From IMG/VR virus record IMGVR_UViG_3300020469_003050, positions 248,001-312,000 of that record: DNA of 64,000 nt. The stretch is one strand, 5' to 3'. Below, one piece after another: positions 32,822-39,928 of this stretch. The notes beneath the pieces were generated by a model. That model was not told the origin of the DNA. It saw only the letters and a list, made by a program, of their open reading frames with translations, and did no database searches. Both the position numbers and the translations under genes were made by a program. Positions within the stretch are counted from its first letter, which is position 1, and every line of letters begins with the position of its first letter.

Positions 32822-33175
32822 ATGAAAACATCAATTATCGGACTGCTAGTCGCAGTCTTTTTTTCTGCAACGGCGTTTGCAGAAGACACAAGTGTATCAA
32901 ATGATATTTCTTGGTCTCTAACATTAGAGAGACAAACAGAAGCAAATGCTAATACAGGCGAACTAATGGGGACTATGGAAGTTTTAGGACTTGATGTTTC
33001 TGCGGGTGGACTGTGGAACATTGATAAATCAGGTGAAGATTTTATTGACTTGAATAAAACGATGTTAAATGTTAGCCACTCGCTTTCTGACCAAGCAAAA
33101 GTGTATCTAAAGAATGACTTTAGTACAGATTGGGACAGAACTGAGTCAACAATAGGTCTACAAATTACGTTTTAA
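32822..33175 (+). CDS. Exported small beta-barrel/porin-like protein
   Basis: Signal peptide ending AFA; C-terminal IGLQITF beta-signal; promoter 32737-32765, AGGAGG SD. Confidence 0.65.
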   Translation: MKTSIIGLLVAVFFSATAFAEDTSVSNDISWSLTLERQTEANANTGELMGTMEVLGLDVSAGGLWNIDKSGEDFIDLNKTMLNVSHSLSDQAKVYLKNDFSTDWDRTESTIGLQITF

Positions 33176-33179
33176 TTTG

Positions 33180-33210
33180 TTGACAAAAACACCTCTATAG
33201 TGTATAAATA
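33180..33210 (+). promoter_or_regulatory. Overlapping early (TTGACA-17-TATAAA) and late (TATAAATA) promoter of tmRNA
   Basis: Both motifs share 33203-33208. Confidence 0.65.
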
Positions 33211-33215
33211 TAGAT

Positions 33216-33486
33216 GTTAACGTTGAAGCAAGTTCAACACTATACAGGACCTGGGGGCAGTACCCAGCAGGTCCACCATAAACACATTATCAGTTTGCAT
33301 TAGTGTGTTTATGATGGGCCTGAACTAGGATCGACTGGTGGTTAATAGGCGAGTGGAGTTAACCGAGTGACTTCGTTATTGGTCAAACACTATAATTGCA
33401 AACGACAATTATCAGCCAGAAATGGCAATGGCGGCCTAATTTAGGCACGTAGGGGTTGGTGACTTGCCTGGCAACAGAAAAGTCAC
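33216..33486 (+). ncRNA. ssrA: tmRNA, circularly permuted two-piece alphaproteobacterial type; tag ANDNYQPEMAMAA (33398-33439)
   Basis: Acceptor piece ends CTGGG-GGCAGTA-CCCAG-CAGGTCC-ACCA (33278); hairpin intervening segment; coding piece starts GGGCCTG (33316), giving a G3:U70 Ala acceptor stem. Confidence 0.95.
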
Positions 33487-33515
33487 ATTTTTATTTGGGA
33501 GTGGGTTTTTTGTAA

Positions 33516-33854
33516 ATGGCATACGTAGTAACGCAAGATTGTATAAAATGTAAGTATACTGATTGTGTGGAAGTTTGTCCCGTTGATTGCTTTTATGAGG
33601 GCAAAGATACTTTAGTTATTAACCCAGATGAATGTATAGATTGCGGTGTTTGTGAACCCGAATGTCCTGCAGAAGCAATAATTCCTGATACGCATGAAAA
33701 ATTTACAATGCGACTCTACGATATAAATAAAAAGTGGTCAGAACAATGGCCAGTAATTACAGAAAAGCAAGATCCCTTACCTGATGCTGATTCACTAAAT
33801 CCAGCAATGGGATATTCAGAAGATAAGACAAAGTTGTTAGATGAATACGATTGA
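33516..33854 (+). CDS. fdxA: 7Fe ferredoxin (FdxA type)
   Basis: [33 protein letters not shown]. Confidence 0.95.
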
Positions 33855-35534: not shown

Positions 35535-36082
35535 TAATGACTAAAAAAGATTATGGTTATCCTGTTTGGGTAGTTGAAGAAGTATTTGAAACTAATGTGG
35601 CAGATGATGTATTAAGACAATCAAAAGATTTACCATTTGTTCCAATGGAAGGCAAGAGAACAGATAAAACAGGTAAAAGAAATTGGATGAATCAATATAA
35701 AGGCAAAGAATGGAATTCATTTGAAGAAGTATGTTTATTGTTTGATAGTAAATATATGAAAAAAAAGTTTAGTGACGTTTGTGAAAAAGACTTTACTAAC
35801 TTAGGTACAAGAATAGAATTATGCAAAGATGCAAAAGGAAGTTGGTTGCACAATCACTTTGACGATAAAGCAAAGTTATTTACTTTACAGATTTACTTAA
35901 CAGACACAGATACAAGTACAAGTTTTATGAAGAAAGATACTCCTGCAAGAAAAAATACAGGTTGGTTCTTTGCAAATACAGGAACTGAACTTCATGGACT
36001 AAGTGCTTTGACACAAAATAGAATAAGCATCATTGTTAACTATTGTGATGAATCATGGAGAGATAGGTCTGTAATTGTATGA
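35531..36082 (+). CDS. 2OG-Fe(II) oxygenase-like protein
   Basis: HFDD..LQIYL..ELHG..RISIIVNY. Confidence 0.7.
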   Translation: MIMTKKDYGYPVWVVEEVFETNVADDVLRQSKDLPFVPMEGKRTDKTGKRNWMNQYKGKEWNSFEEVCLLFDSKYMKKKFSDVCEKDFTNLGTRIELCKDAKGSWLHNHFDDKAKLFTLQIYLTDTDTSTSFMKKDTPARKNTGWFFANTGTELHGLSALTQNRISIIVNYCDESWRDRSVIV

Positions 36083-36801
36083 GATATAAAAATAGTAATC
36101 AAAGAACTAAAGACTATCTAGCTAGATTTGACAAAAATAAAGTTTTACAAAACTTGGTAGGTACGGATACGCCTGTAATTTTAGATATTGGTGCTAACAT
36201 TGGTCAAACTGTAGAAAAGTTAAAGATTATATGGGAGAATGCAGTAATACATTCTATAGAGCCTTTACCAGAAGCATATCAGGAACTATACTTAACGAAG
36301 GGCATAATGTCAGATGTATATGTGTATAATCATGCTCTAGGCTCAGTAAATGGTTGGCAAGAGTTTAATGTCAATAAACATCAACCTATGCTTAGTGGTT
36401 TCTATAAGCTAAATGAGAATAGCAAAGATAGTATTGCTATCAATAAACCCGAAAAGGCACATAAGAACTTCTTAGAATCTGAACCCACACAGATACCTGT
36501 TATGACATTAGATACGTTTACAAAGCAACATAACATAGAAAATATAGACATAATTAAGATGGACGTTCAAGGTGCTGAGCCTGAAATACTAGAACATGGT
36601 ATTGAAACATTAAAAAATACACGAATCGTTCTTACCGAACTATCACTATATGATTTGTACGAAAAGCAGTGTAGTTTCTATGATATAGAAAAAACGTTGA
36701 TTCCCTTGGGTTTTGAATTATATGATGTTGCTCATGTCAGCAAAAATCCAATGAATGGTCGTACAGATTGGGTTGATTTAATTTATTTGAAAAAAAGTTA
36801 A
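36079..36801 (+). CDS. FkbM-family SAM methyltransferase
   Basis: LDIGANIG, SIEP, TLD, IKMDVQGAE. Confidence 0.9.
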   Translation: MRYKNSNQRTKDYLARFDKNKVLQNLVGTDTPVILDIGANIGQTVEKLKIIWENAVIHSIEPLPEAYQELYLTKGIMSDVYVYNHALGSVNGWQEFNVNKHQPMLSGFYKLNENSKDSIAINKPEKAHKNFLESEPTQIPVMTLDTFTKQHNIENIDIIKMDVQGAEPEILEHGIETLKNTRIVLTELSLYDLYEKQCSFYDIEKTLIPLGFELYDVAHVSKNPMNGRTDWVDLIYLKKS

Positions 36802-36809
36802 AAAAAGGG

Positions 36810-36838
36810 TTGACTTTCCCGAATCATTATGCTATATT
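36810..36838 (+). promoter_or_regulatory. Sigma70 promoter of the ncRNA
   Basis: TTGACT-17-(TG)TATATT. Confidence 0.75.
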
Positions 36839-36845
36839 AATAAAC

Positions 36846-37062
36846 ATAAGCATAAAACAATTTAGCGGTTGTTTTATTGTAGTGCAAGGAAGAGGCTGTT
36901 ACCAGACGGTCGAACTTGACTAGTTAGGGGTGGTACCCAGGCTTAAAGCTGAGAGGCTAAGAGTCACATCGTTCTACCGAACGGAACTAGGTTCCCTGGA
37001 TTCAGAATGGTATCTGTGTCGAGGGGTTGGGGGTGTAACCAAGTCCCTCCTACTTTGCTTAT
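36846..37062 (+). ncRNA. Free-standing structured ncRNA, ~217 nt, family unassigned
   Basis: GC-rich island with no long ORF, between promoter and terminator; 5' ATAAGCA pairs with 3' TGCTTAT; internal stems. Confidence 0.75.
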
Positions 37063-37094
37063 ATTTCTGATTGCAATACCAAGCAATCAAAATT

Positions 37095-37158
37095 AAGAGA
37101 CGGTTAGCAAACCATATTTTACTCACTTTCATTTCATATTGCTAACTGTCTCTTTTTT
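37095..37158. terminator. Long-loop hairpin terminator
   Basis: AAGAGACGGTTAGCAA / TTGCTAACTGTCTCTT + T run. Confidence 0.7.
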
Positions 37159-37852
37159 ATTTCTCTCCAATTATAGATTTTATTTTCCAAGGTGTAAAGC
37201 ATACAGTACCTAAACTTATGTGGTCTGCTCCTGCATCTATATAAGTCTGAGCATCTTCTTTAGAATATACTCCACCACCTGCTATGACTTCTACGTGAGG
37301 ATACTTATCTTTTATATAAGCAATAGTCCCCAAGGTATAGGGTTGAAGAATCTTTCCAGAAAGCCCACCCTTTTCACTGTGTAATGTGTTACTTGCATGA
37401 ATTTGTTTATATCCTTTATCTACTATTTTATCTATTAATTTATGTTTTGCAGTTGGAGGTATTTTAACTATACACCATTTATTCTGCATATGTTCTGGAA
37501 ACTTATCGAAACCTTCAAATGTCGTAGTGTCTTCATGTGAATCTAAGTTAGGACAACTTATATTTAATTCTATATTTCTAACACGACTAATAGTTGTTCT
37601 TATTGTTTCCCAATCTGATTTTTCTATGGCCGCAAGTGATAACAAATTATCATATGATGTCTTCATCATTCCAGCACGTAATCCAGGATTGCGTAAACCT
37701 AATTTGTTTCTCCAACCCTGTTTAGTATATCTTAATGTTTTGATTATTTGTTTTAGTCTTCCTGGTCTTGGTTCTACTGTCCAGGTACCTGTAACACTAA
37801 CTGTATCTTTAAAGTTGAGATAGTTTCCAAATGGTGCGGCTATAAAAAACAT
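37157..37852 (-). CDS. Dihydroorotate dehydrogenase-like flavoprotein (compact)
   Basis: NKLGLRNPG, ELNISCPN, SNT, GGLSG, IAGGGV, AGAD. Confidence 0.8.
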   Translation of the reverse strand: MFFIAAPFGNYLNFKDTVSVTGTWTVEPRPGRLKQIIKTLRYTKQGWRNKLGLRNPGLRAGMMKTSYDNLLSLAAIEKSDWETIRTTISRVRNIELNISCPNLDSHEDTTTFEGFDKFPEHMQNKWCIVKIPPTAKHKLIDKIVDKGYKQIHASNTLHSEKGGLSGKILQPYTLGTIAYIKDKYPHVEVIAGGGVYSKEDAQTYIDAGADHISLGTVCFTPWKIKSIIGEK

Positions 37853-37886
37853 TTATTATTTTCCTCATAAAACTATTTATATAAGA

Positions 37887-38708
37887 TTATTTCTTATCTA
37901 GTGCAGAAATCATCCTAGTCATTCCAATTCCTCCACCAACTCTTGGGAAGAAATCAAATTCTAAGAATTTTTCTAGTTCTGCTTCTACTCTTTCTTTAGA
38001 AAATAGTTTGTACAATAATTCTGAGTATTCACCATTTGTTATTGTGTGAAAAGTATCTCTCATCATTTCTACATCACATGAACGTTCTGCGGATCCAATA
38101 GTTTCCATTCCACCTAAGATAACATCTATCTTCTTACTAGTTGCACCGCCTTCATTTCTGCTCATATTCCAGAACGGAGATGTCATTTCAGGAAAATCTG
38201 TAATCATTGTTGAACCGAATTCTTCAAACATTTTAGTTTCATGTTCTGCTTCCATTTCTACTGTTGGTTCTAAGTTGTAATGTTTTTGCCAATCAGCATA
38301 TGTTCTTTCTTCTGGTTTAGGGAACTCTAAGTATTCACATAGTTCGTATTCCATCTTTTTCAAATCATCAATGTCACCTGGCATTTCAAATTCAAACATT
38401 GGGAAGATAATATCGTGTCTACCTGGAATTGCATTTGGCTCTTGTCTATAGGACGTGGAGACACAAAAAAAGCCCTTTGTATCGGGCTTTGAGAGTAATT
38501 CGTGTTCTAACCACATTTGGCCTGTTTGGGGAAGCGGCCAGACTTGGCCTGCGTAATTGTATGTTGCTACATTGAACGGGTCTTCACATGCCGCCAATAT
38601 AGATAATCTGTTTTGGGTATGGACTTCTAAAAATCCTTTATCCAAAAAAAATGACCTTAAAAGGCCAACTGTTCTTGTAAATTTATCCGGAGATATTAAT
38701 TGTGTCAT
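37887..38708 (-). CDS. Asx-tRNA-synthetase catalytic-domain-only paralog (asparagine synthetase-like)
   Basis: GFLEVHT, LPQTGQ, SYRQE..GRH..FEFE, ETIGSAER, GGGIGMTR; no anticodon-binding domain; minus-strand late box 38783-38790. Confidence 0.8.
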   Translation of the reverse strand: MTQLISPDKFTRTVGLLRSFFLDKGFLEVHTQNRLSILAACEDPFNVATYNYAGQVWPLPQTGQMWLEHELLSKPDTKGFFCVSTSYRQEPNAIPGRHDIIFPMFEFEMPGDIDDLKKMEYELCEYLEFPKPEERTYADWQKHYNLEPTVEMEAEHETKMFEEFGSTMITDFPEMTSPFWNMSRNEGGATSKKIDVILGGMETIGSAERSCDVEMMRDTFHTITNGEYSELLYKLFSKERVEAELEKFLEFDFFPRVGGGIGMTRMISALDKK

Positions 38709-38965
38709 TTTCTTTTCCTTTTTGTTATCCAAAAAAAAATATAGCCAAAAAAAAATTTGGTATTCGTTTTTGATGTTGTTTTTATTTATCTTTTTTATTT
38801 AAAAAGTTATCAACAATTCAATTAAAAATTGTATTGATTTCATATCTATTTTGTGTTACATTTATAAATATGAAAGTAACAATGAGGTTACAACCAGGCA
38901 CCAATCGAGCCTGGTCTAATTATGTGAGCACCGTGGTAAAGACGGTAAGCAGAAGGAGATAAAAA

Positions 38966-39928
38966 ATGGATGCACTCACCCTATGGATGGCAATAGGATT
39001 TCTATTTGCCGCATATTCAGTAATCGCAAACGATTCAGTACAAACTCTTGGTACTTGGATTGCATCAAATAACGAAAAATTTAATTGGAAGATAATGTGG
39101 GGAGCCGCAAGTGCGGTACTGCTTTATACTTTGTGGTATGGTTGGACAACTAATGGCGGAGATATTAGTTACGGACGATTAAACAAAATTCCATTTCAAG
39201 AAATACAATGGTATCATGCCGCCGCACCAGGCTTACTATTGATATTAACAAGAATAGGTGTACCAGTAAGTACAAGTTTCTTAGTGCTAAGTGCATTTGC
39301 TAGTACGTTTGTATTAGAGAAGATGCTAGTCAAATCAATGATGGGTTATGCAGTTGCGGCTGTGGCGGCATATGTAATCTGGATTGGTGTTACTAAAATA
39401 CTTGATGAAGCAAAACCAGTCGCTGAAAATCATAAAATGTATTGGCGAGTAGGTCAGTGGGTAACAACTGGCTTTTTATGGTTTACTTGGTTATCACATG
39501 ATATGGCAAACATTGCCGTATTCTTACCAAGACAAATCCCATTTGATTTAATGGTAATGGTAAGTGCAGTATTTGTATTTGGCTTAGGTTATATATTTTA
39601 TACTGGTGGTGGTAAAATACAAAACATCGTAATTGAAAAACATAACACACGTTATGTAAGAAGTGCTACAATAATTGATTGTGTATATTTTCTAATTCTT
39701 TGGTTCTTCAAAGAACTGAATGATATACCAATGTCAACAACTTGGGTATTCGTAGGATTACTTTGTGGTCGTGAACTTGCTATGGCAACTATTACAGGTA
39801 AAGAAAAGTTTAAAACTGTTTTCCCTCTTGTAACTAAAGACTTCATAAAGATGATGATTGGTTTAGGTGCAAGTGTTGGTGTAGTCTTATCTATTCACTA
39901 TATAATTGTTCCCAACGGTTTACACTAA
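38966..39928 (+). CDS. PiT/PHO4-like anion (phosphate or sulfate) transporter
   Basis: Duplicated PiT-like motifs IANDSVQTLGT..PVSTS and SHDMANIA..PMSTT; about 9-10 TM. Confidence 0.6.
   Translation: MDALTLWMAIGFLFAAYSVIANDSVQTLGTWIASNNEKFNWKIMWGAASAVLLYTLWYGWTTNGGDISYGRLNKIPFQEIQWYHAAAPGLLLILTRIGVPVSTSFLVLSAFASTFVLEKMLVKSMMGYAVAAVAAYVIWIGVTKILDEAKPVAENHKMYWRVGQWVTTGFLWFTWLSHDMANIAVFLPRQIPFDLMVMVSAVFVFGLGYIFYTGGGKIQNIVIEKHNTRYVRSATIIDCVYFLILWFFKELNDIPMSTTWVFVGLLCGRELAMATITGKEKFKTVFPLVTKDFIKMMIGLGASVGVVLSIHYIIVPNGLH

What the first reader, a model, noticed from the sequence alone, without database searches (positions are those of the whole stretch)
36810..37158. Free-standing ~217-nt highly structured ncRNA with its own promoter and terminator
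Seen: a GC-rich island without a long ORF in an AT-rich genome. It starts ~7-8 nt after a TTGACT-17-TGnTATATT promoter. 5' ATAAGCA (36846-52) pairs with TGCTTAT (37056-62), GTAG with CTAC, ATAAAACAA with TTGTTTTAT and TGACT with AGTCA. Long-range complements (TACCA/TGGTA, CTAGTT/AACTAG) suggest pseudoknots. A long terminator hairpin follows. It is not a tRNA and lacks RNase P or SRP hallmarks. Its size is compatible with the marine IMES-1 class of unknown function (from memory, unverified). Either a new family or a phage origin for such an RNA would be notable.
Basis: partly seen in the sequence, partly recalled or inferred. Interest (0 to 1): 0.75.

Follow-up and report, generated by a model that had tools for sequence, protein, structure and literature searches.

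The report
Stand-alone manA RNA in jumbo phage
The structured RNA is real but not new: it is a divergent copy of the known marine-phage manA RNA, here made as its own short, abundant transcript instead of a gene leader, which matters because relatives were recently shown to self-assemble into RNA cages in vitro.

Summary
A GC-rich, ORF-free, strongly folding stretch lies between a near-consensus sigma-70 promoter (36810-36838) and a long hairpin with a T-run (37095-37158).

It is not a new family and not IMES-1. Rfam places it in manA RNA (RF01745) at 59.8 bits (cut-off 55.2). This family has been known since 2010 from marine metagenomes and cyanophages, and is filed as a cis-regulatory riboswitch candidate.

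The window comes from a 342.6-kb jumbo phage. More than 120 marine viral contigs and Pelagibacter phage Mosig carry the same divergent subfamily. 82 unique copies give strong covariation for the manA fold plus an extra closing helix.

The context is the notable part:
- 61 of 80 copies have the promoter directly upstream.
- 49 of those 61 have a terminator directly downstream.
- Here the next genes are convergent.
- Four marine metatranscriptomes hold short contigs covering only the RNA, at 19-122x. The upstream gene is at 0 and the downstream gene near 4.

So in this lineage manA is a stand-alone small RNA. A 2026 cryo-EM preprint shows manA RNAs self-assemble through kissing loops, and the window RNA keeps complementary L3/L8, L5/L7 and L8/L9 loops. 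Assembly in vivo, and its purpose, are inferred only.

The parts
36810..36815 (+). -35 hexamer TTGACT
   Evidence: TTGAC is conserved in 61 of 80 unique family members at the same distance. At random positions the detector fires in 0.6% of cases.
36830..36838 (+). extended -10, TGcTATATT, with a 17-nt spacer
   Evidence: It is invariant TATATT in the jumbo-phage relatives and in Mosig.
36846..37062 (+). the folded RNA: manA core plus the outer closing helix P0 (36846-52 / 37056-62). The predicted 5' end is at about 36846.
   Evidence: 90.4% of cells are paired, against 34-48% in slid controls. 48 of 74 pairs change on both sides.
36861..37059 (+). Rfam manA (RF01745) match, model positions 1-192 of 192
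   Evidence: 59.8 bits, gathering score 55.2, E 9.7e-13. E 6.4e-15 and no competing family.
36853..36876 (+). P1 hairpin
   Evidence: helix 2: all 8 pairs show changes on both sides.
36900..36905 (+). loop L3, UACCAG. It complements L8 over 5 bp.
   Evidence: Loop naming follows the preprint supplement.
36930..36935 (+). loop L5, GUGGUA. It is invariant in all 82 copies and complements L7.
36951..36954 (+). L6 GNRA tetraloop (GAGA) on the P6 distal stem
   Evidence: Most relatives have GAAA.
36974..36979 (+). loop L7, CUACCG
37007..37012 (+). loop L8, AUGGUA
37034..37044 (+). loop L9, UGUAACCAAGU. Its ACCA complements UGGU of L8.
37068..37089 (+). hairpin A (TGATTGC / GCAATCA, loop AAUACCAA). 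No T-run follows it.
   Evidence: It is kept as a structure with different sequences in L048, L050/51 and L052.
37095..37158 (+). long hairpin (16-bp stem, 28-nt loop) plus a T6 run. It is probably the terminator, and probably works in both directions.
   Evidence: The stem arms are replaced by other complementary sequences in L050/51.
37111..37134 (+). conserved loop motif ACCATATTTTACTCACTTTCATTT, function unknown
   Evidence: It occurs once in the genome and is kept in all six clade members while the stems vary.

Best explanation
This is a divergent member of the manA RNA family (Rfam RF01745), carried by a 342.6-kb marine jumbo phage. Host RNA polymerase starts at a near-consensus sigma-70 promoter, with the first transcribed base opening the outer helix. 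Transcription ends at or before a long hairpin with a T-run about 90 nt after the fold. The product is a free-standing RNA of about 220-310 nt, not a gene leader. I infer that it acts in trans as a particle. Its conserved loops L3/L8, L5/L7 and L8/L9 are pairwise complementary and L6 is a GNRA loop. These are the elements that join neighbouring molecules into pentamers, decamers and a 60-mer cage in cryo-EM structures of other manA RNAs. What such a particle would do in the infected cell is unknown. Shown here: family membership, the fold, promoter and terminator conservation, and discrete abundant transcription. Inferred only: oligomerisation of this RNA, and any role of it.
For: Family and fold:
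- Rfam match above the cut-off over the full model, with no rival family.
- Six relatives, including Pelagibacter phage Mosig, also score above the cut-off.
- RNAalifold on a structure-blind MAFFT alignment of 82 unique copies recovers the manA helices: 39 pairs, 29 with compensatory changes.
- The full structure including P0 has 90.4% of cells paired, against 34-48% in slid controls. The covariation score is 0.394 against 0.104 or less.

Stand-alone unit:
- 61 of 80 copies have the promoter at a fixed distance.
- 49 of those 61 have a terminator starting within 75 nt.
- 35 of those 49 are then followed by an ATAAATA late-promoter-like box that serves the next gene.
- 20 of the 61 are followed by a convergent ORF.
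- Random-position controls give 0.6% for the promoter and 11% for the terminator.
- In this window the next same-strand gene starts 1.8 kb away, beyond two convergent genes.

Expression:
- Four marine metatranscriptomes hold contigs covering only 36858-37122.
- Depth is 19-122x there, 0 over the upstream gene and 0-4.4 downstream.

Self-assembly:
- The preprint 10.64898/2026.07.01.735769 reports the cage and the interfaces.
- The window loops give 5 bp for L3-L8, 4 bp for L5-L7 and 4 bp for L8-L9.
- Family means are 4.12, 3.43 and 3.27, against 2.5-2.6 for shuffled loops.
- L8/L9 and L3/L8 use different complementary sequences in different subfamilies.
Against: - Assembly has been shown only in vitro, at about 3 mg/mL RNA with 10 mM Mg, for other family members and not for this subfamily.
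- The kissing loops show no covariation inside the subfamily. Fourteen relatives with L8 AUGGCA lose part of the complementarity.
- The transcript evidence comes from assembled contigs. These have no strand and no exact ends.
- One relative's contig runs on past the hairpin (X16).
- In L050/51 the long hairpin has no T-run, so it may not be only a terminator.
- In Mosig, and in many classical copies, the RNA sits directly in front of a gene. A cis role for the family is therefore not excluded.
Confidence: 0.7

Rival explanations
1. It is a classical riboswitch or cis-regulatory leader, as Rfam files the family. The fold senses a ligand and controls termination at the downstream hairpin, which sets expression of the next same-strand gene: the 320-aa ORF at 38966-39928, adjacent in relatives L048/49.
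For: - The family was proposed as a riboswitch candidate in 5' UTRs (PMC2864571).
- Mosig-type copies lie 15-22 nt before rubrerythrin or peroxiredoxin genes. Other copies precede ManC/ManA-like or gp32 genes.
- In L048/49 no convergent genes separate the RNA from the 320-aa gene.
- An aptamer followed by a terminator is a standard riboswitch layout.
Against: - In this window two convergent genes lie between the hairpin and the next same-strand gene.
- The terminators start 13-40 nt after the closed fold and share no sequence with it. I found no alternative pairing between the aptamer's 3' strands and the terminator arms.
- In 35 of 49 terminator-bearing relatives, the next gene has its own late-promoter-like box after the terminator.
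- Depth drops 5-30 fold after the RNA.
- No paper in the searched library reports a ligand for manA since it was described in 2010.
Confidence: 0.15
2. It is a cis-acting processive antitermination RNA, in the manner of HK022 put or EAR. It is made just after an early promoter and modifies RNA polymerase so that it reads through the following terminator.
For: The order strong early promoter, structured RNA, terminator is the order seen for put elements (general knowledge, not tested here). One relative's metatranscriptome contig continues past the hairpin (X16).
Against: - Twenty of 61 copies, including this one, face a convergent gene right after the terminator. Read-through there would only make antisense RNA.
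- Depth falls sharply after the RNA in X1 and X3.
- The RNA is far larger and more elaborate than known antitermination RNAs.
- It forms defined oligomers on its own in vitro.
Confidence: 0.05
3. The region codes for a small protein: the 52-aa minus-strand ORF at 36974-37132, with a hydrophobic N-terminal half, or one of the 29-46-aa plus-strand ORFs. On this view the apparent structure is incidental.
For: ORFs of 29-52 aa exist on both strands. The start of the minus-strand ORF (MKVS) lies in the conserved loop motif.
Against: - Spacing between invariant anchors varies over all three classes mod 3 (37/27/18), so no frame is kept.
- The minus-strand ORF is 15-25 aa in five relatives, with unrelated tails.
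- Substitutions are compensatory in stems, which coding does not predict.
Confidence: 0.03
4. It is merely the 3' UTR and terminator region of the upstream FkbM-type methyltransferase gene.
For: It follows that gene, 8 nt after the stop codon, in all jumbo-phage relatives.
Against: - A conserved consensus promoter sits between the gene and the RNA.
- Other family members follow unrelated genes.
- The methyltransferase gene has zero metatranscriptome depth where the RNA has 19-122x.
Confidence: 0.03

Closest known systems
manA RNA motif, Rfam RF01745 (Weinberg et al. 2010, PMC2864571), classical cyanophage / marine-metagenome type such as manA_A0F1
   Same: - It has the same helices, P1-P9, around a four-way junction, and matches the full model above the cut-off.
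- It shares a GUGGUR L5, a GNRA L6 and an ACC-containing L7.
- It comes from marine phages.
- It is usually right behind a sigma-70-type promoter: 52 of 67 classical copies.
   Different: - The scores are only 55-64 bits.
- L8 and L9 carry different, still complementary sequences: AUGGUA with UACC or ACCA, instead of CUGUA with UACAG.
- J2/3 reads GCAAGGAAGAGG instead of GACUGAAUAAACUU.
- An extra outer helix, P0, joins the two ends.
- 80% of promoter-bearing copies are terminator-bounded, against 31% of classical copies.
[quoted passage not shown]
   Same: L3 and L8 are complementary in both: UCAGC with GCUGA there, UACCA with UGGUA here. Both also have L5/L7 complementarity and a GNRA L6. 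In those structures these elements form intermolecular contacts that build a pentamer.
   Different: Those RNAs are in a cellular genome and in a 5'-UTR position. The sequences differ in every loop. Assembly of the window type has not been tested.
manA copy of Pelagibacter phage Mosig EXVC030M (MT647606.1, 108164-108371, unannotated)
   Same: It is the closest isolate copy: 76% identity and 64 bits. It has the same promoter design, the same P0 and loops, and a two-piece tmRNA about 3 kb upstream, as here.
   Different: It has no terminator. The rubrerythrin start codon follows about 15-25 nt after the fold, so there it is a leader. The phage is a 141-kb T4-like myovirus. The window's phage shares only 2 of 10 proteins from that segment.
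IMES-1 and other marine IMES RNAs
   Same: Both are abundant structured RNAs seen in marine metatranscriptomes, of roughly similar size.
   Different: No IMES family matches this region, even at E <= 10.

Membership tests
manA RNA (RF01745) | Covariance-model score at or above the family's gathering score, over the full model | tested here: met
   59.8 bits against a cut-off of 55.2, model positions 1-192 of 192.
manA RNA (RF01745) | Conserved secondary structure (P1, P2, P3a/b, four-way junction P4-P7, P8a/b, P9) kept by compensatory changes in homologs | tested here: met
   82 unique homologs. RNAalifold finds 39 pairs, 29 compensatory. With the full structure, 90.4% of cells are paired against at most 48% in slid controls.
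manA RNA (RF01745) | Conserved loop and junction nucleotides (GUGGUR in L5, GNRA L6, ACC in L7, GUG after P2) | tested here: met
   The window has L5 GUGGUA, L6 GAGA, L7 CUACCG and AGUGC after P2. L8, L9 and J2/3 differ from the consensus.
manA RNA (RF01745) | Position in the 5' UTR of a protein-coding gene (the basis for the Cis-reg label) | tested here: not met
   In the window a hairpin with a T-run follows, then two convergent genes. The next same-strand gene starts 1.8 kb away. This feature describes context, not the RNA itself. It is met in Mosig-type relatives.
manA RNA (RF01745) | Marine phage or marine metagenome origin | tested here: met
   The window is from an IMG/VR jumbo-phage record. 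More than 120 marine viral contigs hold the subfamily, as do marine metatranscriptomes.
Self-assembling manA particles (cryo-EM preprint, 2026) | Complementary loops that can form the L5-L7', L3-L8' or L8-L9' kissing contacts, and a GNRA L6 | tested here: met
   The window gives 5, 4 and 4 Watson-Crick pairs for L3-L8, L5-L7 and L8-L9. Family means exceed shuffled loops. Complementarity alone does not show assembly.
Self-assembling manA particles (cryo-EM preprint, 2026) | Formation of pentamer-based closed oligomers | not testable with these tools
   The complex predictor refuses RNA-only jobs. This needs SEC, native gels, mass photometry or cryo-EM.
Riboswitch | An expression platform whose terminator or RBS-sequestering helix competes with part of the aptamer | tested here: not met
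   The terminators start after the closed P0 helix. Their sequences vary and show no complementarity to the aptamer strands.
Riboswitch | Specific ligand binding | not testable with these tools
   No paper in the searched library reports a ligand for manA.
IMES-1 | Match to the Rfam IMES models | tested here: not met
   No IMES hit at the gathering score over the window, nor at E <= 10 over 36780-37200.

The most novel reading that the evidence does not exclude
In a large, uncultured group of marine phages (this jumbo phage, pelagimyophage-like contigs, and Mosig as the one isolate), manA is not a gene leader. It is an early, highly expressed, terminator-bounded small RNA. Its conserved loops make it polymerise into closed RNA particles inside the infected cell. 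That would make it the first natural RNA-only cage with a biological role. In the window's clade, the extra ACCA-bearing 3' hairpins, including the conserved 24-nt loop, would supply further contacts or cargo sites.
Probability: 0.25. Interest if true: 0.85.

Novelty: new variant of a known kind. Interest (0 to 1): 0.5.

Why it matters
manA has been an orphan riboswitch candidate for 16 years. In 2026 it was reported to form a 60-subunit RNA cage in vitro, with no known biology behind it. This locus and its roughly 80 unique relatives show that, in one abundant marine phage lineage, the RNA is its own transcription unit. It has a consensus early promoter and its own terminator. The next gene often has its own promoter or points the other way. 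Marine metatranscriptomes hold far more of the RNA than of its neighbours. That is what a trans-acting, concentration-dependent particle would need, and it is hard to square with a leader.

The work also points to a culturable system for testing it, Pelagibacter ubique HTCC1062 with phage Mosig. It also shows that pelagiphage-like genomes, reported to lack riboswitch-type RNAs (PMC7029224), carry clusters of them: glutamine riboswitch, manA and freshwater-2.

Tried and rejected
- **IMES-1 or any other Rfam family:** no match, even at E <= 10.
- **tRNA-like gene:** ARAGORN finds only the tmRNA in the window.
- **Conserved small ORF:** rejected.
not part of the covarying structure.
- **Riboswitch-style anti-terminator pairing:** I looked in the 3' flanks of about 80 relatives and saw none.
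- **RNA-RNA docking with complex prediction:** I did not pursue it.
- **Second copy or target of the conserved terminator-loop motif:** none in the phage genome on either strand.
- **Placing the phage as T4-like:** tblastn with ten Mosig proteins gave only two hypothetical-protein hits. PHROGs gave nothing for most neighbours. Lineage and host stay open; the alpha-type tmRNA and the Mosig link suggest an alphaproteobacterial (SAR11-like) host.
- **Cellular genomes:** of nine pattern hits, six do not match the A2 profile and are probably chance. The other three are marine MAG contigs that look like misbinned phage.
- **Terminator detectors:** my first detector under-counted and was replaced.

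Full report
**What is there.** The stretch 36846-37062 is a GC-rich island (0.45-0.52 against about 0.3 around it). No ORF in it exceeds 52 aa. It folds far better than shuffled controls: -102.5 kcal/mol for 36846-37158, z = -4.6. Eight bases upstream ends a promoter, TTGACT-17-TGcTATATT (36810-36838). Downstream come a small hairpin (37068-37089) and a 16-bp hairpin with a 28-nt loop followed by T6 (37095-37158). Upstream on the same strand is an FkbM-family methyltransferase gene (36079-36801). Downstream, on the opposite strand, lie a dihydroorotate-dehydrogenase-like TIM-barrel gene (37157-37852) and a class-II aminoacyl-tRNA-synthetase-core-like gene (37887-38732). The next plus-strand gene starts at 38966. 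The window is bases 248001-312000 of a 342,607-bp IMG/VR virus record (34.8% GC, 10 tRNAs, one tmRNA), so it is a jumbo phage.

**What it is.** Rfam's manA model (RF01745) matches 36861-37059 over its full length at 59.8 bits, against a cut-off of 55.2. A permissive scan of the region alone finds nothing else of note, and no IMES family. The genome holds one copy. manA was described in 2010 as a riboswitch candidate from marine metagenomes, T4-like cyanophages and two gamma-proteobacteria. It was typically seen in 5' UTRs of mannose/fructose, nucleotide, chaperone and photosynthesis genes (PMC2864571). The RNA is therefore a member of a known family, and a phage origin is not new for that family.

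**Relatives and structure.** The closest isolate copy is an unannotated intergenic stretch of Pelagibacter phage Mosig (76% identity, 64 bits). It is the only hit among 50,697 phage records, both for this copy and for a typical relative. Fragments of related jumbo phages carry the RNA after the same methyltransferase gene. A core pattern finds more than 120 IMG/VR contigs, giving 82 unique sequences.

- On a MAFFT alignment made without structural information, RNAalifold recovers the manA helices: 39 pairs, 29 with compensatory changes.
With it, 90.4% of cells pair, against 34-48% when partners are slid. The covariation score is 0.394 against 0.104 or less, and 48 of 74 pairs change on both sides.
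- The outer helix covaries in 4 of 7 pairs.
- No reading frame survives. Spacing between invariant anchors falls in all three classes mod 3. The 52-aa minus-strand ORF shrinks to 15-25 aa in relatives.

**Context: a transcription unit of its own.** The promoter is conserved in every close relative and in Mosig.

| Feature | This subfamily | Classical type | Random control |
|---|---|---|---|
| Promoter directly upstream | 61 of 80 | 52 of 67 | 0.6% |
| Terminator starting within 75 nt | 49 of the 61 | 21 of 67 | 11% |
| ATAAATA late-promoter-like box after the terminator | 35 of the 49 | not counted | not tested |
| Convergent next ORF | 20 of the 61 | 8 of 67 | not tested |
| No terminator, same-strand gene within 100 nt | 8 of the 61 | 27 of 67 | not tested |

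The eight direct-leader copies are the Mosig type, which precede rubrerythrin or peroxiredoxin genes. The terminators begin after the fold is closed and share no sequence with it, and I saw no alternative pairing of the riboswitch kind. The classical manA type was fetched with a different core pattern. The stand-alone layout is therefore a feature of the window's subfamily. In the window's own clade the genes after the hairpin differ between relatives: none, one or two convergent genes before a shared 320-aa ORF. The RNA unit stays with its upstream side, and the hairpin marks the edge of a variable island.

**Expression.** Twenty-three marine or aquatic metatranscriptome runs hold part of the stretch. 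I laid the assembled contigs of four runs from at least three studies on 36300-37700. Short contigs cover only the RNA:

| Run | Span covered | Depth |
|---|---|---|
| X8 | 36858-37092 | 23.7 |
| X1 | 36860-37122 | 19 |
| X3 | 36908-37094 | 121.9 |
| X16 (a relative's strain) | 36876-37163 and onward | 39.2 |

The methyltransferase gene has depth 0 in all four runs. The downstream gene has 0-4.4. Uniform DNA carry-over would not give this pattern. These are contigs, so they carry no strand and no exact ends.

**How it probably works.** A July 2026 preprint (bioRxiv 10.64898/2026.07.01.735769) reports cryo-EM structures of five manA RNAs. They form pentamer-based decamers and octamers, and one forms a 60-subunit icosahedral-like cage. 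The contacts are intermolecular: L5-L7' and L8-L9' kissing loops in one set, and L5-L7', L3-L8' and an L6 GNRA-receptor contact in the Photobacterium set. The preprint's helix names match the structure derived here.

- The window RNA has L3 UACCAG, L5 GUGGUA, L6 GAGA, L7 CUACCG, L8 AUGGUA and L9 UGUAACCAAGU.
- These give 5, 4 and 4 Watson-Crick pairs for L3-L8, L5-L7 and L8-L9.
- Across the subfamily the means are 4.12, 3.43 and 3.27, against 2.5-2.6 for shuffled loops.
- The same loop pairs are complementary with different sequences in other subfamilies: L8/L9 is CUGUA/UACAG in the classical type, and L3/L8 is UCAGC/GCUGA in Photobacterium. Cross-subfamily pairings score like shuffles.

Together with the stand-alone, abundant transcript, this makes a trans-acting, self-associating RNA the best reading. 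Two limits apply. Within the subfamily the loops are conserved rather than covarying. Assembly has been shown only in vitro and for other members. The purpose of such a particle is unknown.

**Rivals.** A riboswitch reading fits the family's history and the Mosig-type copies. It does not fit the convergent genes, the separate terminators, the downstream promoters or the sharp drop in depth seen here. A put-like antitermination RNA would share the promoter-RNA-terminator order but fails on the same points. A small protein and a plain 3' UTR are both excluded by the data above.

**Left unexplained.** The 24-nt core of the long hairpin's loop (37111-37134) is kept in all six members of the window's clade. 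The stem arms, by contrast, are swapped for other complementary sequences, and in L050/51 no T-run follows. The motif is unique in the genome. It contains ACCA, as do L3, L9 and the loop of hairpin A. It may therefore be a further partner for the GGUA/UGGU loops, but that is a guess.

**Verdict.** The free-standing architecture is supported, and the claim of a new family or of IMES-1 is wrong. This is a new variant, in sequence and in genomic use, of a known RNA family. Interest is moderate. It is raised by the recent cage structures and by the fact that the main pelagimyophage survey reported finding no riboswitch-type RNAs (PMC7029224).

Noticed in passing
window 33167-33530 (+): There is a two-piece (permuted) alpha-proteobacterial-type tmRNA gene in the phage, with tag peptide ANDNYQPEMAMAA. 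Mosig also has a tmRNA about 3.1 kb upstream of its manA copy. None of the proteins in the Mosig segment has a tblastn match between the tmRNA and manA of this phage.
   Followed up: partly
window 37111-37134 (+): The conserved 24-nt loop motif ACCATATTTTACTCACTTTCATTT sits inside the long hairpin. It is kept in six relatives while the stems are replaced, and it occurs once in the genome. Its function is unknown.
   Followed up: partly
window 37157-38732 (-), compared with L046-L052: A variable island begins right after the hairpin. This phage has a DHODH-like gene and a class-II aaRS-core-like gene there. L048/49 have none, L051/52 have a 274-aa gene, and L046 has a 308-aa gene. All of them resume with the same 320-aa ORFan (window 38966-39928).
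   Followed up: partly
window 37198-37170 (-): There is a near-consensus promoter-like site, TTTACA-17-TATAAT (11 of 12), on the minus strand. It lies inside the 3' end of the DHODH-like gene and points into the long hairpin, antisense to the RNA.
   Followed up: no
L064 4319-4402 and 4919-4966; the same in L090, L117 and L142: In many relatives manA lies in a cluster of structured RNAs. A glutamine riboswitch (RF01739) lies upstream. After the manA terminator and a GATAAATAC box comes a freshwater-2 RNA (RF02980), in front of a 153-aa gene with no Pfam match.
   Followed up: partly
L187, L191 and L188 (PBPT01000082.1, PBPT01000016.1, NZGL01000024.1): Three marine MAG contigs carry this RNA: 153 kb and 335 kb contigs binned as Neomarinimicrobiota, and a 37.7 kb contig binned as Gammaproteobacteria. 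They are probably misbinned phage genomes. The 335-kb contig is about the size of this jumbo phage.
   Followed up: no
G000 whole record: IMG/VR labels the record as having direct terminal repeats, but its first and last 200 or more bases are not identical. Any repeat must be shorter than 200 bases. The genome carries 10 tRNA genes.
   Followed up: no
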